NCBI GenBank assembly: GCA_000388065.2
Contig: KB932202.1
Origin: Fonticula alba ATCC 38817
Lineage: Eukaryota; Protista; Nucleariida
Length of the DNA stretch: 23,624 nucleotides
Reading direction: 5' to 3' (one strand)
The first letter of the stretch is position 1. Each line of letters begins with the position of its first letter. Positions 2 to 23,615 of this stretch are shown here, in pieces. The position numbers and the translations under genes are program-made. The notes beneath the pieces were generated by a model that had not been told where the DNA came from, made no database searches, and was given only the letters and a program-made list of their open reading frames with translations.

Positions 2-2844
2 CGCGTGTCAGGCGAGACCGACCTCCCTGGGATTGCCGGCCCGAGTGCCGGCAAGCCCCTGCCGTTGGCCCGGGTCGCCGCCGCCGCCGCCACCGAAGCC
101 CCAGGCACCCCGAGTCGGTCCGGATCGCCCCGGCCCACGCACGCCCCGCCTCCTCCCCCCGCCGGTGCGGCTACCCCCTCCCGTGCAGCGGCTGCGGCCC
201 CGGCCTCGACTTTGGCCCCGGCCCCGGCCACCCCTCGGGCGACGGAGCTCCTTGCGCGACCGGTCCCGGCCCCGGATGCCCCGAGCTTCTCCCTGAAGTC
301 GGCCCTGACGGCGCCCTCCGACAGCAAGAACCCCTTCATGTTTGCCTCCTTCTCGGATACAGCCGCCCGGGCAGCGGCCTCGGTGGTCTTCACGCCGGAG
401 CCTGCGACCTCGGGATCCGCCTTTTCCGCTGCCTTTGCCGGGTTTTCTTCCTCCTCCTCCTCAACAGGCTCTGGTGGATTCTCCCTCCCTCCGGCCCCGA
501 GCACCTTCGGGGGGGCAGCGTCGGCCCCGGTGAAGCCCTTTCAGCTCCGGATGCCCGACGCCCCGGCCACGGGGGTCACTACCCCCTCATCCTCGGCCGG
601 GCCCGCCGCCGGGGCCGGAGTCGCTCCCCTGGCCATGCACCTGCCCTTCTTCACCCAGGCCCTCAGCTCTTTCTCCCATTCAGCAGCCACCTCGGCACCC
701 GACGCCACGCCAGCCCCGGCGGCCACCGGCGACACGGACATGGCCTCCCCGGCGTCGGCCTGCAAACTGGCCACCGGCGTCGGCGCCTCGCCCGACAGCG
801 CCATGGTCATCAGCCCGGCTGGCAAGCGCCCGGCCGATGAGCAGCTCATGAGCCCGTCGAAGGTTCGCCGGCCGGTGGCCGGCAGCGGCCCGGAGACCCC
901 GGCCCGCGCGGCCCCCCTGCATCCTGGCGACATGGCCCTGGCTAGCACCCCTGCCAGTGCTCCGATGCTCACGTCCCCGGCCGGGGGAGATGGTACGCCT
1001 CGCCTCCCTGCTGCACGTGCACAAATGCCTACGCACACACCCGCCCGGGCACGCGCATAGCCATCCTCCCTGTCTGACCGTCCTCTCTTGCCTCCCCCCG
1101 CCTCTCTCTCTCTCTCTCTCTGTCCCTCTCTGTCTCTCTCTGTCTCTCTCTGTCTCTCTCTGTCTCTCTCTCTCGCTTCCTTTCTCGCTCTCTGCCTTGC
1201 CAGCGTCGGCCCCTGTCGCGCATGCCGAAGAGGTCGCCTACACGTCGCTCAGCAGTTTGGACCTGTCCACGGCCACGGCAGCGGCCCTCACTTGCCTCTA
1301 CCAGGTCATCAACTACTCACTGCAGATGGAGGCCGGGTCTGACGGCCTGGCCAGTGGCGAGGCAAATGCCGCCACCGGCTCTGGCGGTGTGCTTGGGTCT
1401 TCGGCTCCGCCTGCCGCCGCCCCGGCCGCTCCTGTCGCTGCCGCTGCCACTGCCACGCCTAGTTCCGGCAGCAGCTGGCAGCGGCGTTTCCGGTCCTTCT
1501 TCAGTAGCTCTTCCTCTTCCTCTTCCTCCTCCTCCGCTGGCTCTTCCAACACCAGTGCCAGCCTCCTGGCCGGAGCGCAGCAGGCCGGCGTGCACCTCCC
1601 GCCACCGATCAAGCTGCGCTCGGCCCCTCCCTGCCCGGGGGGCCGCGCCATCTTCGGCGTCCCCCTGAGCGAGCTGGAGACGGTGACCATTCCCTCTGGC
1701 GGGCCAGATGACTTGACCCTGCCACGCGCGGCACATGCCCTGATGGTGGAAATCCGCCAGCGCGGCCTCAACTCGCAGGGGCTTTTCCGCGTGGCCGGCA
1801 GCAAGAAGCGGACCAAGGTGCGCATGAATGGGCATCCGCCTGCTGGGATCCCGAAGCCGGTGGCTCGCCGGGTGCCCATGTGTCTGACCTCCTCCTCCTC
1901 CTCCTCCTCGTCCTCCCAATCCCGGTCTTTGTCCCCCCGGGTGGCGACGACCCCCGGGCATGGGGGCCTGCCTTTGCAGCTCGTGCGCGAGTGTCTCGAG
2001 CTGAGCAAGTCCTTTGCCGAGTATGAGGAGCTGAATATCTTCGATTTGGCCGATGTTTTCAAGGAGTTCCTGCGTGAGTTGCCGGATCGCCTGATCTCCA
2101 AGGCCTTCACCGGCATCTACTATGGCCTGGCCAAGGCCCACATGCACTCGTTACTTGAAGAGCAGACAGTGCGTGTTGCTTGTGTTCTCGCTCTTTTTTC
2201 TTCTTTTCCTTTTTTTTTTGCGTGTCTCCCCCACCGACTCCTGCAGTGGTCCGATGTGTGACTGGCCGCCATGCTGACATGCCTTGGCGCCTGTGTGTGC
2301 CTGTGTGCATTGGCCCATGTAGCTCGTCGTCCTTCAGCTGTATCACCTCATTCTTCCGGCGCCACACCGGCAGCTCCTCCAGGCTTTGGTGGGGTTCCTG
2401 CACGAGGTGCAGCTGTGTGCGGCCGGCAACCAAATGGAGGTGGACAACCTGGCGCGCGTGTTTGTGCCGAACCTCTTCTACACGGACGACATCGATCCCC
2501 TGGCCGTGATCGACTATCAGAATGTCATCCTACGGCTGTTCTCCCTGTCAGTACTGCACCCGACCGAGGCCTTCCGCGTGCCGAGCGCCCTTCTCGGACG
2601 AGGGACCTTCCGCTTGGCTCTGGCCAACGGCGTCACTGTGGTTTCTGGCGGGGTGCAAGACGCCGAGGCCGCGGCGGCCAGCACCAGCGCCAGCACCAGC
2701 GCCAGCACCAGCCAGGAGAGCATTGCTGTCACGCCGGCTGCCCCTCCATCCAGCGGCATGCGTCGGTCCTCCTCGGCCATGATGCTGTCGATGCTGTTGC
2801 CGGGCGGAAAGTCCGGCCCTTCCTCGGCTGCATCCACCCCCTGA
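2..2844 (+). CDS. RhoGAP-domain protein with long S/A/P-rich disordered N-terminus (5'-partial, >=771 aa, 4 exons in window)
   Basis: Exons <2-992, 1204-1817, 1980-2168 and 2323-2844 (TGA 2842-2844). Donors GTACGC (993), GTGCGC (1818), GTGCGT (2169); acceptors CAG 1203, CAG 1979, TAG 2322 (in-frame alternative CAG 2337). All phases are consistent. The spliced product has RhoGAP motifs IFGVPL, GLFRVAGS (arginine finger), DLADVFKEFLRELPDRLI and NQMEVDNLARVFVPNLF. The frame is open to the window start with no initiating ATG visible. Confidence 0.9.
1102..1174 (+). repeat. (CT)n / (TGTCTCTCTC)n pyrimidine microsatellite in RhoGAP intron 1
   Basis: Read directly: a (CT) run followed by about 5 copies of a 10-bp TGTCTCTCTC unit, inside intron 993-1203. 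Confidence 0.95.
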
Positions 2845-13037: not shown

Positions 13038-13663
13038 TGCTCTGTGGGGGGGGCGCTTGGGGTGGTGCTCCCCCTCGTGGGTGTCGGGTTTCGTGTCCCC
13101 CCCCCCCCCCCCCCCCCGCCCTGCTCCGGGTCCTCCTTCAGCGCCAAACCACCAGTGCAATATACGATAATCCACCCTTGCGAAGCCGTCTTGATTGTTT
13201 ATGGCGCCCCGGCGCATTCCTTCGCCGGGGACGCGTGCTCGCAAGGGCAAGCGCTGTCACAGGCCCGGGCCATGATGGCCTGGCCCCCTTTTTCCTGCAC
13301 ATGGAGCCGGCCCAGCAGCCGGGGGCCCTGTCGATCTCCGGCTCAGATCGCCCGTCCGAGGCGGGAGGAGGGCAAAAAGAAAAAAGCGCCCCCGCCGCAA
13401 TGCGACATCCAGCCGGGCAGATGCGACGCGGGCTTGCTTGCCAGCCGGTCCGGGCTGGGTCGGATCGATCCTCGACGTCGAATCTGGCCCGCGCGCCCCG
13501 AGAAGGCCTCTCCCTTTTCGGGCAGCGGGCCGGCCCGTGTGCACCACCGGAGACACCCCTCTGCCGCTCCCACCCCTTCACGGGCGCCCCTCCCTCTCTC
13601 CCCTCCTCAACTCCTGCACGCATATTTCATGCGCACGCTTGCGTGTGAATTCTTTCTCCCACG

Positions 13664-13687
13664 CACACACACACACACACACACACA
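13664..13687. repeat. (CA)12 microsatellite upstream of the glycosyltransferase ATG
   Basis: Read directly, ending 85 nt upstream of ATG 13772. Confidence 0.95.
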
Positions 13688-13771
13688 AGCCCCGGCCAGC
13701 CGTTCGTGAGCCTTGCTCTGGCATATGGAGGGCCGCATCTCGGAAGCACCAGGCCTCCATCCTCTCGGGCG

Positions 13772-16700
13772 ATGAGGGATGACGCGCTTCTGCACCCCTT
13801 GCCAGGTCGGCCACCCACATCCGCGAGTGCGGGCTTCTGGACTTTGCGCCGGCGCCTGCGCTTGCCCCGGCGCCTGCGAGATTTCGGCATCCTGCTTGGC
13901 CTGACCGCCGGCCTGCTGTACATGCTGGCCGGCTGGCCCGGGCCGCCCGACGGACGGCATGCGGCCGAACCACCGATCGAGGTCGCGCGCGGGGCAAAGT
14001 CCCCGCCCGAGCGGCCATTGGATCTGGCGCCGGCGGCTCCCCCGAGCCCGGATCCCGCGCGGCTGGACGTGATCGCGGCGGCCGCCGACTCGACGCGGCT
14101 CGGTCGCTTCCTGCGTAGCTCCACCGGGGGTGGGCACTGGCTGGCCGGCTGGGAGCCCCTGCCGATGGTGGCCGGCGCTGCCTCGACCGACTCCGACACC
14201 GGCCCGTCCTCGGACGAGACTTCTCACGGCCCACGATCCGCACGTCACTTGGTGCTCGTGGTGCCTTGGCACGACGAAGCGGACCCCGGCCGCCGGGCCG
14301 AGTACCTGGCGGCTCTGCGGCGGAATTTGGCCCTCCTCGAGGCCGGGCCCCTGGGCTTGGACCGGGTGGTCCTGCTGGTGGCGGCCTCGGGCCGGGAGGC
14401 CCTTGTCCCAGGGTCGGACGAATTCGACTTGCCAGCCTCATCGGATGCCGTGGCCGCCATGGACGCTCTGGCAGGGGCCGACCGGGCCCGGGTGGCCATT
14501 CGCCTGGTTCCCTCGGTGGGGTCGGTCCTACAGGCGGCCTCGCGTGCTGGGGTCCGGCAAACGGACTTGACCGACCTCCAAGGCCGGGTCAGCCTATGGC
14601 ATGCACTGCGAACGGCGGATGCCGCGTGCGCTGCCCTTGGCGACGCGTGCTCGGGGCCTGGACGCCGGTGCCCCCGGCCGGAGTGTGTTCGCATCCTTGC
14701 CAATGCTGACATCTCCCTGGACGCCTCGATCGGGTGCGCACCGTGTGCCTTTTCGCCTGCCGAGGGAAGGGCCTCTCGCCGCATGTGGCGCCGCTCCCGC
14801 GACTAACTCCATGCTTTGTCTTGGCTGCCGGGGGCTGGCCTGAGGAAGTTTGCTGCGCCTTGACCCGTGGCTCGGCCGCTTTGACGGCGATGCCAACTTG
14901 GGTGCCGATGCAATGGCCGAAGATACGCGTGCGGCGGATTTGCTGCAACGTGCCCGGCGATCCCGGCGATCGGTCGAGCATGTAGCCCCTCCGGGGGGCG
15001 GCCCGGCCAGCAAGCGCATTGCGTATTTCCTTTCCCGGTAAGTTGCCTGCTCTCATGCTCAACGCTCCTGCTGCGTTTCCCCGGTCGCGCCTCTTGCTGA
15101 CCCGTGGCCCCGCCACTTCCACATCCACACACCGATGCACACCTACGCATGGGCATGTGGCTATTTTGGGGGGGGGGCGGACCCTTCCCCAGGCATGAGG
15201 CTGTCTCTTCGCCACTTGCGCCGGACATGTGTGGAGAGGCGTATGCTGGCAGCCATGATGTGGTGGCCTGGATGCATGGCCTCGATGAGCAGGCCGACTA
15301 TCGGGTATATCGCGACCGGTCTGCCGGGGCTGGGAAAGCTCCGCGTCCCCTGCCAAAGGAGGATTTGGCCTTGATTCCTCTCGGAAGCGTTGGCTATGAG
15401 AACCGGCTGATGTATGAGTTTTCCGCGTCCGGGCTCTTTATCCCGATGAATCCGTGCTTCAGCATTCGCAGGTGCGTGCCCCTCTGGGCCAAGCCCGTCT
15501 GGGACGCCATGGGTCCCGGTCGGCTGCTGCTGTTGCCGCTGCCGCTGGCGTTGCTGTTCATGTTCCCATGTTCGCTGCCACCGATCCGCACTGTCACCAT
15601 GGTTGCTCCGGCCGCCGTCAGGACTGCCTCCGTGTCTTCCATCGCCCCCGCAACTAACCCGCCTTCACAGCTTTCACCACCACCAGTCTGGCCGCCGCGC
15701 GTGGCGGGCCCCAAGCACGGACCGGTCCATCGACGTGTGCTCTTCCGATCTGTTGCTCCGGCCGCCGTCAGGACTGCCTCCGTGTCTTCCATCGCCCCCG
15801 CAACTAACCCGCCTTCACAGCTTTCACCACCACCAGTCTGGCCGCCGCGCGTGGCGGGCCCCAAGCACGGACCGGTCCATCGACAGCCTGCTGTCCGGCT
15901 TTCGGGCCAACACCGATGGCCGGTCGCTCTATGTCCGGCCGACCTTTCACCATTTGGATCCGCGCCTGGCCGCCGGCCGGCCGGCGGATGTCTGGCGCGA
16001 CCTGTTTTTGGCGTACGACCGCGAGCAGGTCCGCCCGTATGTGGACCTGAAGTTGATCGGGTGGATTCTCCGGCGCTCGGTGCGTCTGGTCGATGATGAG
16101 GCCACCGATCAGGCAAGATCGGAAGAGCGTCGTGTTTTGGCGTACGACCGCGAGCAGGTCCGCCCGTATGTGGACCTGAAGTTGATCGGGTGGATTCTCC
16201 GGCGCTCGGTGCGTCTGGTCGATGATGAGGCCACCGATCAGGCAGGCATTGCGGCCGAGGTGGCCGAGTCCGATGCCGTGGTCGGTGCCCAGCCCGAAAC
16301 CCTGTGCCGGGTGCCGCTGGCCCTGCGGGACCTGGTTGCTGGCTTCTGCGATCGCCTGCGCCGGGTGTCCGGCAACAAGCGCAGCCGATGGGACTGCGAC
16401 CTACTTCCATGCGAGGTGATCGACCCGCGGCAGGCCCTCTCGCAGCGGGTGCGTGTGGCTGTCCTCCTCCGCCGCCTGCTCTTTCTCCTCTTGCTTCCCC
16501 TTGGTGGCTGTTCTTCTCTTCCTCGGGCACTTGTTCATGGCCACATTCTTCCTGCCACTGGCGAGACTTCCCACCAGGACCTCGCCAGGCATTGACACGT
16601 TTGCCCTCGGGGGGTGGCTATTGGCCGATTCCAGTTCACGTGCGGTGCGGCGCCACACCAAATTGTGTGTGAGCGGTGGACTTCGCTGCCGGGTCTCTTT

Positions 16701-18816
16701 CGGCGGCCGGCCGGCGCGCTGGCCAGTCCCGAAGGCGCCGGCGCCCTGCCGGTGCACTATGAGGGACGCTTTGCGGCCGATGCATCCTTCTTCGATAAGG
16801 TGCGCACGCCTACCCCCTCGCCCCTTTCCCCCCCCCCTCGGCCCCGCGCGGCGGTGGGCCTCGCATAGTGGTGTTTGGCGGCTGACACAAACTCCCGGGA
16901 GGCCAGCTGGCCAAACTGGCCCAAGCCAACAAGGTGCAGCACATCTTTTCACACATGGGGGAAAGCCTATCGGGCCATCCGGCCGCCTTGCGCGCGGTCT
17001 TCCTCCAGACGCTCAGCCCTGAGCCGGAGGATCGCTTTGGCTTGGCCACATTGGCCACTCGAGCCGAGCAGTGCACCGACCGGCTGGCCCTGCCGGCTCT
17101 GCCGGCGGACCTCCTGCCGCCGGCCAACATGCCGCCGGTCTTTGGCTGGAGCATCGGACATATGTCGCACTTGTTCCGGGATCGAAGCTGGCACTATCTG
17201 CGGCACTTGGATCTTGGCTCCTTCGCTTCGGACCGCACTGGTACGCATGCGGCAGGCAGCGTGCCTCAGCTGCCCTGGCGAGGGGGGGGGACACCGCAGA
17301 AAGGCCCAGGGACAGGCTCCGCCATGGCCACTGACAGGACCAATCGTATGTCGGGGCAAATGTGGGCAACACGAACGGCGCGCATCGGCACGCACACCAC
17401 ATGTGCACATTCTTGCCTTGCCGCCCTCTCCCCCCACCCCCCTCCCTGCCCATCTGCCCTGGGATGGCACCCGTGACCGGACGCACCAGCCAGCGATTTG
17501 GCCCTCGAGTGGCGCCAGCGCCCCGGGGGGGTGCTCTTCTTGGCGCACAATTGTCGTAACGCCTCGTGGCGAGCCCAGAGCGTCCTGGCTCTGGATCGGG
17601 CTCTCCGGCGAGGGTATTCCCCCGATGCTCGTGGCGGTGCCTTCGATCTGGCCCGGGTGGTCCCGGCATCCGAAGCACCGGGGCGAGTCGAACAGCCCGG
17701 GGGCCCCACCACGGCCACTGCCACCGCCACCGCCACCGGTTCCCAGGCGACCGCCTTCGCAGAGACCTCCTCGGTGTCTGGCTCAGTCGATCGGCCGGGC
17801 CGGTGCCTGAATAACATGGCCTGGCCGCTGCCAGCCCAGTGTCACCCGGACGCCGTGGTCCTCAGCCCACCGCTGCTGGCGGAGTGCCGGGAAATCGCCC
17901 AAACCGAGCGCGAGGGCGGCCGTGCCGGTAAAATCGCCCTCATGCGCCGGTACCGCTTTGTGGTGTCCATCGAGAACGTACATGAGTGCGACTATGTCAC
18001 GGAGAAGGTGCGCCCTCCTGCCTCCCTCGCGTTTCCTCCCTTTGCTCCTGGCCATTTCGCCGTGCTCCTTATCTTTGCCAGCTCGTTGGCAATGGGGGGG
18101 GGGGGGATGCCTGCCGGAGTGTGAATGTGCCCCGGCGTTGTGTCCCACCACGTGCCCCCGTGCGGGGGCACCGGCAAGCTGGGCCTCGCTTCCTTCTGCC
18201 GGTCGGCCGCCGGACCTCATCTTCTTCTGCCTCTGACGCCGGCTGCTTCATGACACTGCCACCTCTCCAGCTGTGGGATGCCCTGGCTGCTGGAGCCATT
18301 CCGATTTATCTCGGCCCGCCGGCCGATCCGCCGGGTGCCCCGCTGGACCCGGCCCCCTGGCAGTGGTGCCACCTCGGGGCGGCGTTGCGCTTTTCCCCCC
18401 GGCCGATGGGCTGCCTGGATGACGGGCCCTTGGCGGGGACTGGGGGCTCTGAGACTGAGGACCCGGTCGCGGACTGGGAGTTCTTGAATGATCGCTCGAC
18501 GGTCGGCATCAACGCGGCCGCGGCCCAGGTTGCCCGGGCCATTCATCGGCTGGAGCATTCGCTGGATCTGGCGGCGCGCTTCTTCGCCTGGCGGTCGGTG
18601 GTCGACGAGACCGCCGCCGGGGCCAAATTCCGGGCGTTCCTGGCTCGGGTGGCCGCCCTGCAGGCACTCGATCAGATTGAGCTGCTACCCAGCCCCGCTG
18701 GCGATCCAGCTCCCGCCGGGCCGAACCCGGGAGGGACATCTGCCCTTCCCCCTCCGACCGAGGAGGATTGCCACGTGTGTCGGCGCCTGCTCCAGTTGAA
18801 CCGCCGGCCGGGCTGA
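13772..18816 (+). CDS. Type II membrane multidomain glycosyltransferase: uncharacterised GT-A-like domain plus C-terminal GT10 alpha-1,3/4-fucosyltransferase (~1154 aa once artefacts are removed, 8 exons)
   Basis: Exons 13772-14733, 14849-15037, 15193-15471, 15821-16448 (minus the 129-nt artefact), 16635-16799, 16934(or 16940)-17240, 17490-18007 and 18271-18816 (TGA); phases are consistent. The N-terminal basic tail is followed by TM DFGILLGLTAGLLYMLAGW. The GT10 alpha-1,3-FucT motif YRFVVSIENVHECDYVTEK|LWDALAAGAIPIYLG is rebuilt across intron 18008-18270. It is preceded by VLFLAHNC...R and VDRPGRC, equivalent to the GT10 xSNC and VDxYGxC elements. Confidence 0.85.
15602..15884. repeat. Artefactual 133-bp direct repeat (15602-15734 / 15752-15884) joined by Illumina adapter
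   Basis: Two identical copies at a 150-nt period; the spacer is TruSeq adapter sequence. Confidence 0.97.
15732..15751 (+). other. Illumina TruSeq adapter fragment GACGTGTGCTCTTCCGATCT
   Basis: Exact 20-nt match to the 3' end of the TruSeq Read 2 primer/indexed adapter; translates as DVCSSDL in ORF 15603-16595. Confidence 0.98.
16006..16244. repeat. Artefactual 110-bp direct repeat (16006-16115 / 16135-16244) joined by Illumina adapter
   Basis: Two identical copies at a 129-nt period; the spacer is TruSeq adapter sequence. Confidence 0.97.
16116..16135 (+). other. Illumina TruSeq adapter fragment AGATCGGAAGAGCGTCGTGT
   Basis: Exact 20-nt match to the TruSeq read-2 adapter read-through; translates as RSEERRV. 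Confidence 0.98.
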
Positions 18817-19445
18817 GGAGAGGGCCACACACACACGCACACACGATATGGGGCCCGGGGGGGGGGGGGGGGCCGGAAGACAAGCCGCGCTCATTGTGGG
18901 CTATCCCGCACACCCTGTGGAGCGCGCGCCCAATAGATTTAACGCACATTTTGGGCCTTGGAATGGGCTAGGGTTGCGCCGAGTCGAACATTCCTTGCGC
19001 CGGGCCGCGGCCCCGCCCTGCTTTCCCCCTGCTGCATGAATCCGTGCGCGCAACAAACGGGACGAGGGGTTCCCCTTCTCTCAGAAGAGAGAGAGCCCAG
19101 GGGCGGCGGGCGCTTCTGACGGGGGGGCCCCCGGCGCTCCGGGCCATGCCCCCAGGCGGATAAAGGGCCCTATCTTCCCCCGGGCTTCGGGGCCCGCGCG
19201 GCTGGGCAGAAGCCCTGCGAAAGAGCCATTTAATATTGGGAGCTTTTTTTTCCCAAGCGGCGAACCGAGGGCGGCGAGGGGTGCGCGTCCGTAGATGCAT
19301 TGTCGCGTGTGCTTTTGCCGGGGGGCACTTCTCGCCGTTGTGATCCGCAGGGGTAGGGCGGCCCAGGGTTCCTTCTCCTATCGAGCAATCTGCCGGTGTC
19401 CCGCTCACTCCGTGGGATGCACTTGGCATATGGGTTGGTGATGGC

Positions 19446-19483
19446 GGTGGTGGTGGTGGTGGTGGTGGTGGTGGTGGTGGTGG
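19446..19483. repeat. (GGT)12 trinucleotide repeat
   Basis: Read directly in the region between the glycosyltransferase and F-BAR genes. Confidence 0.95.
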
Positions 19484-22004
19484 AAGGGGGGGCCAGAGGC
19501 GACAGAGCGCAGGGCGAGCTCGACGCCCGGGGCGTGCAGGCGTCTGCCCCGTGGCAAAGATATTCACTGAGCCCTTGTGGGGCCGGTCGCTCCGATCGCC
19601 GCCAGTGCGTGTGCTTGTGTGTGTGTGTGTGTATGTGGCCTGCCTGTGTGCAGGGGCTTGCATGTAGGGCCAAGCCGGGCGCATAGGAGTGTCATTTCCA
19701 TTCCCCCCGCTCTCCCAGAGGTCAGGATGTAATTTGTGCAATGCGGGCCCGGCCATCTCCCCCTGGCGGGGGATGATGCCCCCCCCCCCCCCCGCTCCTC
19801 CCTGAGAGCCCGATCGGCCGCCATGAGCACATCAGGGGGGGGGGCACCAAGGCCGGATGCCGGTCGAGTCGGGGGCGAGCCAGGGGCGAGCCGTCGGGCC
19901 ATAAACAGGCCATCCCGCCGGCTGGGGGTATTCTCGACCCGATCGACGCGGGTTCCACATGTGTGCGACACCCCAGCTGGCGTGCCCGTGCTCCGAGGCA
20001 TCCTCTTCAGCATCTCCCACCCCCCCCCCTCCCGGACGGTGCCTTTCTTTGCCTTTGTCGCTGGCGCGCCGGTTCGCCTGGTTGGTGAGTCTCCCCCGCC
20101 CTTTGGATCCCGTCTTCTGGGGGCGGATTTTCTCGGGTCGCAGCGAGGGGGGGGGGCACGCTCGCGCCGACATGCTCACCCCCGCGGGTGTGTGTACACA
20201 TGTGCCGGGTCCAATCCCGGTCTTGCAAGAGTGTGGCAGCGCCAGTGCCCGCCTGCTGTTGGGCGGGGGGCTCCCTCATGCTGGCCCACCTCGCGGCCAC
20301 TTGCCTGAAGAGGTTACCTCCTCCCCGGTCCATGGGGCGGTGAATTAAGCAACTCCTGCCAGCCGGTGCGATCGGGTCCAGCCTCTTTCGATGCTCGATG
20401 CTGGCCCCCGAAGGAGGAGGGGACGCCGGCTGGCTTCGGGCTTCTTCCCGCGAAGGCTGCCCCACAGGTGTGCGTCCCCGTCTTCTTGCTTCCCCTTCCA
20501 GGCGCCGGCTGCTTCTGCCATCGTTTCCGGGCCCGGTCGCGTGTGGGCGGCCTGGCCAAGATGCCCGCCGCAGATGGGAGGCGGGGGGGGGGGGGGGGGC
20601 CTCGCGCTCGCGCGGGGTGCCCCTCCTGGGCCGCGGCCGAGGTGCAAGAAATCACCCCAGGGGACATGATGGGGAGCCCCATGGTATTTGTGTGTCTTAG
20701 TTAGGGATTTATATGTGCCCGGAAGGGCGGGCCTGGACTTATCAGTTGCCCCGGGGGCATATCTCGGAGACCCCCCACCCCCGCCAGGGTGCGGCCTTGA
20801 TGCCGCCGTGGTATGCAGCCGGGCCTCCGCCCCCCGAGGGAGGGGGCGCCTTCGCCGGAAGCGACTCCGCTTGCCTGGGCACCACCGGCGCCCTCTTTCC
20901 ACGCGGCACGAAGGCCCGGCTGCTTGAGGGGGCGGGGGGGGGCGGGGGGGGGGGGGCGGCGCCCGGCCAGGACGTCCCGCCATGTCCCCCCGTCCCGAAG
21001 GAAGGCCGGGTGTCAGTATTTTCCAAGCCCGTGCCTGGACATGGTCCTGCCCCCCGCCGAGCGGCTCCCCCCCCCCCCGCCCGGTCCCTGGGCAGATCGT
21101 TGTCAGTAGCCAGGCGACCGGGCTCGGCATGGACCTTCGCGGCGGAGCCCCCTTCCATCACAGGTGGCCAGTGTGCATGGTCACAGCGGGCCGGGGCCGG
21201 CGGCCGCCTGGCCAGAAGTCTCGGCGCAGTTGCCGAACCGAGCCCAGACTGGGGCGGGGGGGGGGGGGGGGCCAGGGAATGTGGTGCCCCCGCGCGACCC
21301 CTTGGTCCGTGGAGAAACAGCCAGGCACATCGCCCCTTCGGTTTCCCCATCGCCCCCCTGCGCGACCCGCCGAAGCCTTCCACCACCGGCGACCGGTGGC
21401 AGGGCCCCGTGCCGGTGCGACGCCCCCCCCCCCGCCCCTCGCTCAAGTTAGATCGCCCGTGCCTGGGCCGTTGTGCAGTCCTTTCCCGGGCCTGTGGCCG
21501 TGTGTGTGGCCGTGTGTGTGTGTGTGTATGCGGCTGCGTAGAGATGAACGTGTTACCAGGTGGCCTGTTGTGCGCGATGGCCCTTTCGATGTCCCCTCTC
21601 TCCCCTGTGGGCATTAGCCACCTGGCCAGTTGGCTGGCCACCCCAGCTGACTGGCTGGCTGGTTGCCGGTTGGCTCCGGCAAACAGCCGGCCCGGCATCG
21701 TCACCGATGGCGCATACATACGCGCGCGCGCGCGCGCGTTGCACTCAACTCGGGCCGTCCCGCGCGCGACCCGGCCGCCACATTATCCTCCAACTCGCTC
21801 CCTCCCCCCCCCCTCCCACGATTGTGCCTCTCCGTCCTTCTTCCTTCCCCTGTCGCTCCCCCCTCTCCACCCGCGCGCGACGCCGGAAGACGACCCTCGA
21901 CCCTCTTCCCCCCTTTCCTAGACACACACACACACTCTTTTTTCCCGCCCCCGCGCCGACCGCCGCCTCCTTCCTGCTCTCCGCGGCCACACCCTCCCAA
22001 GAAG

Positions 22005-23615
22005 ATGACCGCCTCTTCCGGGCCCCCGCCGATGTCCTCGTCCGGCACGCCGACGCTCAGCTTCGCCGACCACTTTTGGGGCGCCGATGACCGTGGCTTC
22101 GATGTCCTCTACGCGCATATGAGCGCCGCCAAGGACACCAGCAAGCTGGTGCTGGAAATCCTCGAGACGCGCGCCCGCTTGGAGGAGGAGTACGCCAAGG
22201 GCCTGCAGCGTCTGGCCAAGGCGATTGCCGGGCTCGGAGCCGGCGGCGCCGAGGACGATGCCGATGTCCCGGCTGCCGTGGTGGAGACCACTGCCCCCCG
22301 GTCCGGGTCCGATGTCCAGATCGCTGGCGACTATGGCTCCACCAAGAGTGCCCTGGTGACCCTGCGCAATGAGATCTCCACCGCGGCGCAGGCGCACCAG
22401 CTGTCGGCCGATACTCTGCGCACGGAGGTGGCCAAGCCGCTGGACGCCTTCATCAGCGACCAGAGCATCGCCCGCAAGCAGCAGGGCAAGATCATGCAGT
22501 CGGCCCAGAAGCGCCTGAAGGAGATGAAGGCCAATGCCCTGCGCGCCAAGAAGAATGAGTCCTCGAAGGCTCGCGCGGCTGAGGTCCTCGCCGAGTCGCT
22601 TGAGCGTGGTACGTTGTCATGGCCCCATGGGTCCCGCCTTTGGGCTCGCTCTTCGGTCCTGCTTTTTTTTTTTGTCCCCGCGGCAGGCGTCATGCTGGTG
22701 GTGATGGAAGCCCTGGTGCTGGATGCTGCCCGCTTTCTCGGGGTCCTCCTCTTCTCTCCCATGCCGATGCAATGCTGACCTATGCCCCTCCCCGCGCCTC
22801 CCGCGCCTCCCGCGCCTCCCGCGCCGATAGTCAATAGTCAGCGCAATGAGAAGGAGGCCGAGAAGGTTCAAAAGAAGTACCGCAAGGCCATGGCCGAGGC
22901 CGCCGCCGCCGAGCGCGAGCACTCCGAGGCCCGGCAGCGCCTGTTTGCCGCGCACCAGCAGTGGACCACCGACATGGTCACCACCGCGGCCCTGTATCAG
23001 TCGCTGGAGGAGGCCCGGCTGGACACGCTGCGCGCTGCCATTTGGGCCTACACCAATGCGGTGGCCACCACTTGCGTGGCCAACGACCAGGTGCGCATGC
23101 CGTCTTCCCTGGCCCGTGCTCCTCCATGCCCGCCCGGTGCCCAGCTTCTCGCACCTGTTGCCCGGCTCTGACGCTCTTTCCTCTCGTTTTTTTTCTTCTT
23201 CCTGCACCCTCCCCCCACACACGCATGCGTGCGTGCGTACATTCGCAGTCTTGCGAGCGGATCCGCGGCAGCCTGGAGCAGTGCCAGTTTGGTCGCGATC
23301 TGGACATCTTTGTCCGGCGGAATGGCACCGGCACCAGCCGGCCGGACGCCGATGGCAACCTCGTGGCCGCTGGCAATCTCGATGCCCCGCCCTCGGCCCG
23401 GACGACCCTCTCCCACCGGCCCCCCTCGTTGACTGGGTCCCTGACGTCGTTGAGCTCCTCGGCCGGATCCACCGGCTCGGCCCCGCCTACGGAGACGCTC
23501 CCCTCGTCGCTGGATGACACGGCGTCGGTGGCGTCCTTCCCCCCGGCGTCCGCCGTCTCGGACGCCGGCGCTCCGCCGCCCTACTTCAACAGCTCCCAGG
23601 CGCCCCTCTTCTATG
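22005..23615 (+). CDS. F-BAR (FCH) protein of the Cdc15/Imp2/PSTPIP type (3'-partial; a C-terminal SH3 domain probably lies beyond the window)
   Basis: Exons 22005-22608, 22831-23090 and 23249-23615, then a probable donor GTTCGT at 23616; phases are consistent. It has the FCH signature SFADHFWGADDRGFDVL...TRARLEEEYAKGLQRLAK and the F-BAR end motif LYQSLEEARLDTLRAAIWAYTNAVATTCVANDQ|SCERIRGSLEQC...DLDIFVRRNGTG. A Ser/Pro-rich linker follows and ends in PLFY, which resembles the start of a family SH3 domain. Exon 3 is missing from the supplied ORF track because it has no stop inside the window. Confidence 0.9.

What the first reader, a model, noticed from the sequence alone, without database searches (positions are those of the whole stretch)
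13772..18816. Two-catalytic-domain Golgi-type glycosyltransferase: uncharacterised GT-A-like domain fused to a GT10 fucosyltransferase
Animal and plant GT10 enzymes are typically a single catalytic domain of roughly 350-500 aa. After splicing and removing the adapter artefacts this protein is ~1154 aa: TM, stem, a ~370-aa domain with a DxD-like ANADI motif, a linker, then a full GT10 domain (HIFSHMGES, VFGWSIGH, LAHNC, YRFVVSIEN...DYVTEKLWDAL...GAIPIYLG). The layout suggests a bifunctional enzyme that builds an acceptor sugar and then fucosylates it. This is conceptually like the bifunctional Dictyostelium PgtA, but type II membrane-anchored and therefore probably luminal (inference). It is a candidate for a lineage-specific surface or matrix glycan pathway.
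Basis: partly seen in the sequence, partly recalled or inferred. Interest (0 to 1): 0.75.

Follow-up and report, generated by a model that had tools for sequence, protein, structure and literature searches.

The report
Fucosyltransferase with long orphan N-terminal region
This is an already annotated gene of the slime-mould-like amoeba Fonticula alba that encodes a membrane-anchored GT10 fucosyltransferase carrying an unusually long N-terminal region with no detectable relatives; that this region is a second sugar-transferring domain is plausible but not shown.

Summary
Window 13772-18816 (+) is one multi-exon gene, identical to the public model H696_01677 of Fonticula alba (1163 aa; UniProt auto-name 'Fucosyltransferase'). 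Both Illumina adapter artefacts are real and sit in the public assembly.

The C-terminal part is a GT10 fucosyltransferase:
- Pfam PF00852 scores 42.5 bits against a cut-off of 23.9.
- Sequence and fold matches go to solved GT10 enzymes only.
- Only the GDP-fucose-binding half is statistically supported. The acceptor half is recognisable by short motifs alone.

The N-terminal ~600 aa consists of a signal anchor, a Pro/Ala stem and a ~350-aa alpha/beta region. It has no match in Pfam, PHROGs, NCBIfam or PDB. The core of its first exon finds only itself among 1.84 billion proteins. A profile of bacterial GT2 domains does not match it, and AlphaFold gives a poor model.

The support for a GT-A reading is weak: protein-language-model neighbours (viral, glycosyltransferase-like proteins), a beta-alpha-beta start, and the ANADIS motif. 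'Bifunctional' therefore remains speculation.

A GT2+GT10 fusion exists in Parabacteroides leei, so the layout is not new in kind. No RNA evidence could be obtained. Interest is moderate to low.

The parts
13772..18816 (+). Whole gene (Fonticula alba H696_01677, XP_009493857.1), start codon to stop codon
   Evidence: P0001 maps at 100% identity. One gene is called over this range in GCA_000388065.2 KB932202.1.
13772..14734 (+). Coding segment 1 (residues 1-321): cytosolic Arg-rich tail, TM, Pro/Ala stem and the first half of the orphan alpha/beta region
13883..13936 (+). Signal-anchor / TM segment (residues 38-55), preceded by 9 Arg in 37 residues, which suggests N-in (type II) topology
   Evidence: Kyte-Doolittle 19-residue window scores 1.55. 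The topology is inferred from the positive-inside rule.
14237..14731 (+). Core of the orphan region (residues 156-320). AlphaFold predicts beta-alpha-beta-alpha-beta-alpha at modest confidence. It ends with ILANADISLD (14693-14722).
   Evidence: The exhaustive HMMER search finds only itself, plus one spurious fn3-repeat giant protein. The structure model is and the motif position.
14850..15038 (+). Coding segment 2 of the public model (residues 322-384). Optional: skipping it is also phase-compatible.
   Evidence: no cDNA available
15194..15469 (+). Coding segment 3 (residues 385-476): YAGSHDVVAW and GSVGYENRLMYEF...NPCFSIR, the second half of the orphan region
   Evidence: no relatives by word search
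15602..15884 (.). Assembly artefact 1 (in an intron): an exact 133-nt duplication flanking a reverse Illumina adapter remnant at 15735-15751
   Evidence: RNA reads that laid here were adapter reads.
15819..16448 (+). Coding segments 4 and 5 (residues 477-643): Cys-containing linker. Includes a REV1-UBM2-like stretch at 15936-16028.
16006..16244 (.). Assembly artefact 2 (inside coding sequence): an exact 110-nt duplication flanking an Illumina adapter remnant at 16116-16134. The public CDS skips 129 nt here. The only GT-AG option is 16029-16157.
16635..17239 (+). Coding segments 6 and 7 (residues 644-809): putative acceptor-side half of GT10. The GES block (16940-16966) is the candidate catalytic Glu; the FGWSIGH block is at 17138-17161.
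   Evidence: Motif order agrees with the consensus of 80 prokaryotic GT10 sequences. There is no statistical match and pLDDT is below 50.
17489..18007 (+). Coding segment 8 (residues 810-982): FLAHNCRNASWR, a low-complexity insert, VDRPGRCLNN, YRFVVSIEN, DYVTEK
18271..18816 (+). Coding segment 9 (residues 983-1163) plus the stop codon: LWDAL..GAIPIYLG and the C-terminal helices of the GT10 domain

Best explanation
One gene of Fonticula alba encodes a type II-like membrane protein of the secretory pathway. Its C-terminal ~500 aa form a divergent GT10 (alpha1,3/4-type) fucosyltransferase domain. This domain most likely uses GDP-fucose, because the donor-binding residues (Y..TEK, the PIY.G block and an Arg after HNC) are kept. 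Between the membrane anchor and this domain lie a Pro/Ala-rich stem (~100 aa), a lineage-specific folded alpha/beta region (~350 aa) and a Cys-containing linker (~150 aa). The alpha/beta region may be a very divergent nucleotide-sugar-transferase-like (GT-A) domain, but this is not established. It could equally be a non-catalytic luminal module for acceptor binding, oligomerisation or spacing. Shown: the gene structure, the GT10 donor-half identity, and the absence of detectable relatives for the N-terminal region. Inferred: the luminal topology, fucosyltransferase activity, and any function of the N-terminal region.
For: Single gene: the public model maps exactly onto the window. Exon phases are compatible and the model is 3177 nt in frame. 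Exons show coding periodicity. The intron between the two halves is an ordinary 186-nt GTGCGT..CAG intron. The GT10 half has no in-frame ATG before residue 715 and no TM segment of its own. GT10 identity: PF00852 scores 42.5 bits against a cut-off of 23.9. phmmer finds Arabidopsis FucTA (9s6a, E 3e-7), mango FUT13, human FUT9 and the H. pylori FucT. An HMM built from 80 prokaryotic GT10 sequences gives 69.7 bits over residues 896-999 and hhalign gives probability 98.7%. The invariant E, N, Y, T, E, K, P, Y and G columns are all kept. The AlphaFold model has pLDDT 70-92 around the motif, and all 18 Foldseek hits at E<=1e-3 are GT10 structures, after which E jumps above 0.1. Orphan N-terminal region: nothing in Pfam, PHROGs, NCBIfam or PDB; only itself among 1.84 billion representatives; no hits in the word searches. 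Hint of GT-A: 30 ESM-feature neighbours at 0.97, all viral 235-295-aa proteins, with one cluster named glycosyltransferase and the nearest Pfam-bearing clusters being DUF707 and GT2 at 0.90. AlphaFold also predicts a beta-alpha-beta start at pLDDT 50-76.
Against: No RNA evidence was obtained. Four RNA runs carrying the species label held nothing of the stretch except adapter and poly-G reads, so expression and the single transcript rest on the public gene model alone. The acceptor-side half of GT10 has no statistical support and is poorly modelled, so catalytic competence is not assured. The GT10 model was built from an alignment chosen by the GT10 motif, which makes it partly circular. For the N-terminal region, hhalign against 55 bacterial GT2 domains gives probability 0.2%, no better than the reversed sequence. 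The fold searches are at noise level: best Z is 6.6 to XXYLT1, and atlas TM-scores are <=0.24 by query length (<=0.58 by the match's length), so nothing clear.
Confidence: 0.7

Rival explanations
1. True two-catalytic-domain enzyme. Residues ~156-500 would be an active, very divergent GT-A glycosyltransferase that adds a sugar which the GT10 domain then fucosylates, both in the Golgi lumen.
For: ESM-feature neighbours are viral glycosyltransferase-like proteins. AlphaFold predicts a beta-alpha-beta-alpha-beta-alpha start. A hydrophobic strand is followed by ANADIS. The later blocks GSHD and GYEN..NP resemble the layout of GT2-type enzymes by eye (my inference). The top VIA match is a GT-A enzyme, XXYLT1, at Z 6.6. 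The layout GT-A + GT10 does exist in bacteria (L105).
Against: No family, profile or solved-structure match. The model is poor and the fold hits are within noise. The acidic pair usual in the 'ED' block reads EN. No orthologous fusion was found in any other organism.
Confidence: 0.25
2. Gene-model artefact. Two neighbouring genes, or a gene plus non-coding sequence, were merged by the annotation, and the GT10 enzyme is really a normal-sized protein.
For: There is no RNA support. The assembly is locally faulty, with two adapter artefacts. Four splice choices are ambiguous. The N-terminal region has no relatives at all.
Against: All nine segments show coding periodicity and compatible phases. 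Only 186 nt separate the halves, bounded by consensus splice sites. The GT10 half has no start codon or membrane anchor of its own upstream of its conserved blocks. The public CDS removes the 129-nt artefact exactly, which is what transcript alignment would produce (inference).
Confidence: 0.1
3. Catalytically dead GT10 relative. The protein keeps the donor-binding motif but has lost the acceptor-side catalytic apparatus, and acts as a lectin-like or scaffolding protein.
For: The acceptor half is unrecognisable to Pfam, PDB and a GT10 HMM and is poorly modelled. Large inserts lie between the conserved blocks.
Against: A GES block matches the consensus 'GEs' that carries the 99%-conserved Glu of prokaryotic GT10. 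The order of all blocks is kept. All invariant donor-side residues are intact.
Confidence: 0.15

Closest known systems
GT10 alpha1,3/4-fucosyltransferases (Arabidopsis FucTA/FUT11 9s6a, mango FUT13 7yro, human FUT9 8d0o, Helicobacter pylori FucT 2nzw)
   Same: The donor-binding motif Y.F..(F/I)EN.....Y.TEK......G..PIY.G is shared. The C-terminal Rossmann-like half is similar by fold search. The type II anchor resembles that of eukaryotic members.
   Different: The protein is 2-3 times longer, with ~600 extra residues between the anchor and the catalytic domain. There are large inserts inside the domain. The acceptor-side half is not recognised by PF17039 or PF18025.
Parabacteroides leei GT2+GT10 fusion protein (L105:3923-5818:-, 632 aa)
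   Same: It has an N-terminal extra region followed by a C-terminal GT10 domain in one polypeptide. It is the best BLASTP match among 116 prokaryotic GT10 ORFs, but only over the 60-aa motif and only marginally above the others.
   Different: Its N-terminal domain is a clear PF00535 GT2 (E 3e-33), whereas the Fonticula region matches no GT2 profile. It has no membrane anchor or stem and is half the size. Nothing shows common descent of the two fusions.
Dictyostelium PgtA (bifunctional Skp1 beta3-galactosyl/alpha2-fucosyltransferase)
   Same: Conceptually, it is a sugar-adding domain and a fucosyltransferase domain in one chain.
   Different: PgtA is cytoplasmic, has no TM segment, and its fucosyltransferase domain is not GT10. 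Here only one catalytic domain is recognisable.
Unnamed viral (Uroviricota / Nucleocytoviricota) 235-295-aa proteins, one cluster auto-named 'Glycosyltransferase family protein'
   Same: These are the nearest neighbours of residues 150-620 by protein-language-model features (score 0.97, 193-201 of 256 features shared).
   Different: There is no alignment and no E-value. Neither tblastn against phage genomes nor pattern scans of viral contigs found anything. Their own function is unknown.

Membership tests
CAZy GT10 / Pfam Glyco_transf_10 | PF00852 match above the gathering score | tested here: met
   42.5 bits against 23.9 on P0001, residues 958-999. Exon by exon the scores were only 18.5 and 9.6 bits.
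CAZy GT10 / Pfam Glyco_transf_10 | Donor-binding motif Y.F...EN.....Y.TEK and the following G..P.Y.G | tested here: met
   YRFVVSIENVHECDYVTEK...GAIPIYLG is present. The invariant columns of 82 prokaryotic GT10 sequences are all kept.
CAZy GT10 / Pfam Glyco_transf_10 | C-terminal half of the GT-B fold similar to solved GT10 enzymes | tested here: met
   All 18 Foldseek hits at E<=1e-3 are GT10, then a gap to E>0.1. Caveat: the model was built from a GT10-selected alignment and has mean pLDDT 55.5.
CAZy GT10 / Pfam Glyco_transf_10 | N-terminal acceptor-side half (PF17039 or PF18025) with the catalytic Glu | tested here: inconclusive
   No Pfam, PDB or HMM match and pLDDT below 50. Only motif-level agreement of GES, FGWSIGH and HNC......R with the consensus, in the right order.
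CAZy GT10 / Pfam Glyco_transf_10 | Transfer of fucose from GDP-fucose | not testable with these tools
   Needs an enzyme assay.
GT-A fold glycosyltransferases (e.g. GT2) | Sequence or profile match to a GT-A family | tested here: not met
   Nothing in Pfam, PHROGs, NCBIfam or PDB. hhalign against 55 GT2 domains gives probability 0.2%. The query was a single sequence, so power was low.
GT-A fold glycosyltransferases (e.g. GT2) | GT-A fold in a structure or confident model | tested here: inconclusive
   The single-sequence AlphaFold model has pLDDT 38.6, with only the first ~130 residues at 50-76 and a beta-alpha-beta pattern. The best VIA Z is 6.6, to the GT-A enzyme XXYLT1, among unrelated Rossmann-like hits. 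The atlas and viral searches were uninformative.
GT-A fold glycosyltransferases (e.g. GT2) | DxD-type metal/nucleotide-sugar motif at the end of a beta strand | tested here: inconclusive
   ILANADISLD is present, but that stretch is modelled at low confidence (as a helix) and there are no homologues to show conservation.
PgtA-type bifunctional glycosyltransferase | Two recognisable catalytic domains in a cytoplasmic protein | tested here: not met
   Only one recognisable catalytic domain, and an N-terminal TM anchor is present.
Bacterial GT2+GT10 fusion (L105 type) | N-terminal PF00535 domain plus a C-terminal GT10 domain | tested here: not met
   GT10 is present, but there is no PF00535 or GT2 profile match in the N-terminal region.

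The most novel reading that the evidence does not exclude
Residues ~156-500 would be the only cellular representative so far of an undescribed GT-A-like glycosyltransferase family otherwise seen in phages and giant viruses. Fused to GT10 in the Golgi lumen, it would form a bifunctional enzyme that builds and fucosylates a Fonticula-specific glycan, for instance one of the Golgi-derived stalk matrix.
Probability: 0.2. Interest if true: 0.65.

Novelty: new variant of a known kind. Interest (0 to 1): 0.35.

Why it matters
Fonticula alba belongs to the sister lineage of fungi. To my knowledge (not tested here) it builds its fruiting-body stalk from secreted, Golgi-derived matrix, so lineage-specific Golgi glycosyltransferases are candidates for that material. 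If the N-terminal region were shown to be catalytic, this would be a rare luminal eukaryotic two-domain enzyme containing GT10, and it would define a new transferase family with viral relatives. As it stands, the solid results are more modest. It is a divergent GT10 enzyme with a large orphan luminal region. The public assembly carries adapter-derived duplications inside the gene, which anyone using this locus should know.

Tried and rejected
- Exon-by-exon Pfam and PDB searches gave only weak GT10 motif hits.
The public protein P0001, returned by a tool, was used by id instead.
- Word searches with exon 1, exon 3 and the GT10 region found nothing but the protein itself.
- The ESM Atlas gave no usable hit with the exon-1 core alone.
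- RNA check: four RNA runs of the coded species label were laid on 13700-18900. 0, 28, 0 and 9 reads laid, almost all of them adapter or poly-G fragments, so this was no test.
- PHROGs and NCBIfam found nothing.
- A scan of viral contigs, a scan of metagenome contigs and tblastn against phage genomes found no relatives.
- P0002, the only other HMMER hit, is an fn3-repeat giant protein and was rejected as spurious.
- My by-eye reading of the N-terminal region as GT2-like was not borne out by hhalign against a GT2 profile.
- MAFFT placed the conserved Glu and Arg columns of GT10 on Q839 and A896. I regard this as misalignment caused by inserts, because GES (residues 716-718) and R837 fit the consensus blocks better. 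That is an inference, not a test.
- I first thought the candidate exon at 14850-15038 was phase-incompatible. A recount showed that both including and skipping it keep the frame.
- The REV1-UBM2-like match was judged probable chance. It is partly driven by a His-tag in 6axd, and the key Leu of the LP motif is Arg.


Full report
**What is there**

The window is GC-rich (about 0.56-0.74 across 1-kb windows, ~0.65-0.71 over this gene) and eukaryotic, with short GT..AG introns. Reading 13600-19000 and the ORF list gave a phase-compatible exon chain on the + strand. It runs from the ATG at 13772 to the stop at 18814-18816. My minimal model is 3177 nt, or 1058 aa.

The exhaustive HMMER search was run with the stop-free core of exon 1 (window:14237-14731). 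It returned a 1163-aa protein, P0001, identical over the query. This is Fonticula alba H696_01677 (KCV72279.1, XP_009493857.1; UniProt A0A058ZD19, auto-named 'Fucosyltransferase'). P0001 maps at 100% identity onto the window in nine segments. The NCBI record GCA_000388065.2, scaffold KB932202.1, calls a single gene over exactly this 5045-nt range.

The public model differs from mine in four places:
- It includes the segment 14850-15038. Including or skipping this segment both keep the frame.
- It uses an earlier acceptor at 15819.
- It uses a later donor at 16448, whose GTGCGT fits the local consensus better than my GTGATC.
- It uses an earlier acceptor at 16907.

None of these can be settled without cDNA, so the protein is 1058-1163 aa. 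All segments show GC1>GC2<GC3 periodicity and the introns do not.

All whole-protein searches used the tool-returned P0001 by id.

**Assembly artefacts**

Two Illumina adapter remnants lie inside the gene:
- GTGTGCTCTTCCGATCT at 15735-15751 sits between exact 133-nt copies, within an intron.
- AGATCGGAAGAGCGTCGTG at 16116-16134 sits between exact 110-nt copies, within coding sequence.

Two or more adapter matches occurred in 0 of 100 shuffles. Both remnants are part of the public assembly.

The public CDS skips exactly 129 nt at the second artefact. Only one GT-AG pair, 16029-16157, can do this. Leaving the duplication in would not break the frame, so this exact removal looks like the footprint of transcript alignment during annotation. 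That is an inference, not a demonstration.

**RNA**

The run search listed only RNA runs carrying the same coded species label, and none was shown to hold the stretch. I laid four of them on 13700-18900. They gave 0, 28, 0 and 9 reads. Nearly all of these were partial, and they piled up on the adapter remnants and the poly-G run. This is no test of expression or of a single transcript.

**The C-terminal half is GT10**

Exon by exon, Pfam saw only the split motif (18.5 and 9.6 bits). On P0001, PF00852 scores 42.5 bits against a cut-off of 23.9 (residues 958-999).

Further evidence:
- phmmer against PDB sequences finds only GT10 enzymes: Arabidopsis FucTA 9s6a (E 3e-7), mango FUT13 7yro, human FUT9 8d0o and H. 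pylori FucT 2nzw/5zoi.
- I fetched 120 prokaryotic loci with the degenerate pattern for FEN.....Y(V/I)TEK and extracted 116 ORFs.
- An HMM built from 80 of these ORFs gives 69.7 bits over residues 896-999.
- hhalign gives probability 98.7% over residues 679-1097.
- In the alignment A1, every invariant donor-side column (E, N, Y, T, E, K, P, Y, G) is kept.
- AlphaFold with A1 gives pLDDT 70-92 around the motif, but mean pLDDT is 55.5.
- In Foldseek against the PDB, all 18 hits at E<=1e-3 are GT10 structures, followed by a jump to E>0.1.

One caveat applies. The alignment was selected by the GT10 motif, so the model is not independent evidence.

The acceptor-side half (residues ~660-830) has no statistical support and is modelled below pLDDT 50. 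By eye, its blocks match the consensus emitted from the prokaryotic HMM, and they do so in the right order:

| Block in this protein | Block in the prokaryotic consensus |
|---|---|
| IFSHMGES | VFYSGES (carries the 99%-conserved Glu) |
| VFGWSIGH | FDYAMSF |
| FLAHNCRNASWR | FCAFISSN......R |

About 50 extra residues lie between the first two blocks. I therefore regard the GT10 domain as probably complete and probably active, but this part is inference.

**The N-terminal ~600 residues**

Residues 1-37 hold nine Arg. Residues 38-55 are the only convincing hydrophobic segment. Residues 57-155 are Pro/Ala/Gly/Ser-rich. This is the usual type II Golgi layout, although the topology itself is inferred. 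Six Cys in residues 501-660 and ten in the GT10 part are in keeping with a luminal location.

For residues ~156-500, every family or sequence search was blank:
- Pfam, PHROGs, NCBIfam and PDB sequences.
- Word searches with exon 1 and exon 3.
- tblastn against phage genomes.
- Pattern scans of viral and metagenome contigs.
- The exhaustive search of 1.84 billion representatives, which found only the protein itself and a spurious fn3-repeat giant protein.
- A search among proteins of 640-2035 aa with the GT10 region also found only the protein itself, so no orthologous fusion is on record.

Positive hints for a GT-A-like domain are few:
- By protein-language-model features, all 30 nearest Atlas clusters are family-less, and the three that were listed are viral proteins of 235-295 aa. 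They score 0.97 and share 193-201 of 256 features. One cluster is auto-named 'Glycosyltransferase family protein'. The nearest family-bearing clusters are DUF707 and GT2 at 0.90.
- Single-sequence AlphaFold gives beta-alpha-beta-alpha-beta-alpha for the first ~130 residues at pLDDT 50-76. The whole model is poor, at 38.6.
- The top VIA-align match is the GT-A enzyme XXYLT1, but at Z 6.6 among unrelated Rossmann-like hits, which is within the stated noise.
- ILANADISLD follows a hydrophobic stretch.

Against these hints, hhalign against a profile of 55 bacterial GT2 domains collected from the fetched loci gives probability 0.2%. This is no better than the reversed sequence. The atlas and viral fold searches are uninformative. 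The GT-A reading is thus a lead and not a finding. 'Bifunctional' is one step further removed.

**One gene or two**

These points favour one gene:
- The public call is a single gene.
- Exon phases are compatible.
- An ordinary 186-nt intron with consensus ends separates the halves.
- The GT10 half has no in-frame ATG before residue 715 and no membrane anchor of its own.

I put the single-gene reading at about 0.85-0.9.

**Comparison with what is known**

The protein is a member of GT10 by its donor-side features. It departs from described members in size and in its orphan luminal region.

The architecture 'extra transferase domain + GT10' is not new in kind. Among the long prokaryotic ORFs, L105 (Parabacteroides leei, 632 aa) carries PF00535 (GT2, E 3e-33) followed by PF17039 and PF00852. 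L007 (869 aa) and L062 (580 aa) carry unexplained N-terminal extensions of 300-640 aa.

L105 is the best BLASTP match to the Fonticula GT10 part, but only over the 60-residue motif and only marginally (67 bits against 63). Its GT2 domain shows no similarity to the Fonticula region. Common descent of the two fusions is therefore not supported.

The PgtA analogy is conceptual only. PgtA is cytoplasmic, has a different fucosyltransferase family and has no TM segment (my own knowledge).

Literature searches found no paper on this protein or on such a fusion. One survey used Fonticula fucosyltransferases merely as an outgroup (PMC10481521).

**Verdict**

The best reading is a type II GT10 fucosyltransferase with a large lineage-specific luminal region of unknown fold (confidence ~0.7). 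The two-catalytic-domain reading stands at ~0.25. I rate the novelty as a new variant of a known kind, and the interest as moderate to low (0.35), because the gene is already annotated and the exciting part of the claim could not be substantiated with the available tools.

Noticed in passing
window 15602-15884 and 16006-16244: The public Fonticula alba assembly carries two Illumina adapter remnants, each flanked by an exact duplication (133 nt and 110 nt). The second lies in coding sequence, and the annotated CDS skips it as a 129-nt 'intron'.
   Followed up: yes
window 15936-16028 (P0001 residues 516-546): This stretch resembles the REV1 ubiquitin-binding motif UBM2 (PDB 6axd/6asr, E 1e-4 to 1e-3). 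The key Leu of the LP motif is Arg, and part of the score comes from a His-tag. It is probably chance, and it would be odd in a luminal protein.
   Followed up: partly
window 13097-13117, 18856-18872, 13665-13690, 18822-18845: A poly-C run upstream and a poly-G run downstream form inverted arms around the gene, with (CA)n microsatellites right at both ends of the CDS. Whether this is typical of Fonticula intergenic DNA was not checked.
   Followed up: no
L105:3923-5818:- (Parabacteroides leei NZ_JAMBQG010000018.1): A 632-aa bacterial protein with a clear GT2 domain (residues 9-131) fused to a complete GT10 (PF17039 + PF00852). It is a prokaryotic precedent for GT-A + GT10 in one chain.
   Followed up: partly
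L007:3437-6043:+ and L062:670-2409:+: These are prokaryotic GT10 proteins of 869 and 580 aa. Their N-terminal 640 and 300 residues match no Pfam family, so they are further GT10 enzymes with unexplained N-terminal extensions.
   Followed up: no
window 18817-22004: About 3.2 kb downstream of the gene has no called gene in the NCBI record, although it holds long ORFs (e.g. 20713-21921, 402 aa, no Pfam match).
   Followed up: no
window 957-2258 and 21663-22775: Neighbouring ORFs carry RhoGAP (E 2e-10) and FCH/F-BAR (E 2e-11) domains. The downstream gene is an FCH+SH3 protein in the NCBI record.
   Followed up: partly
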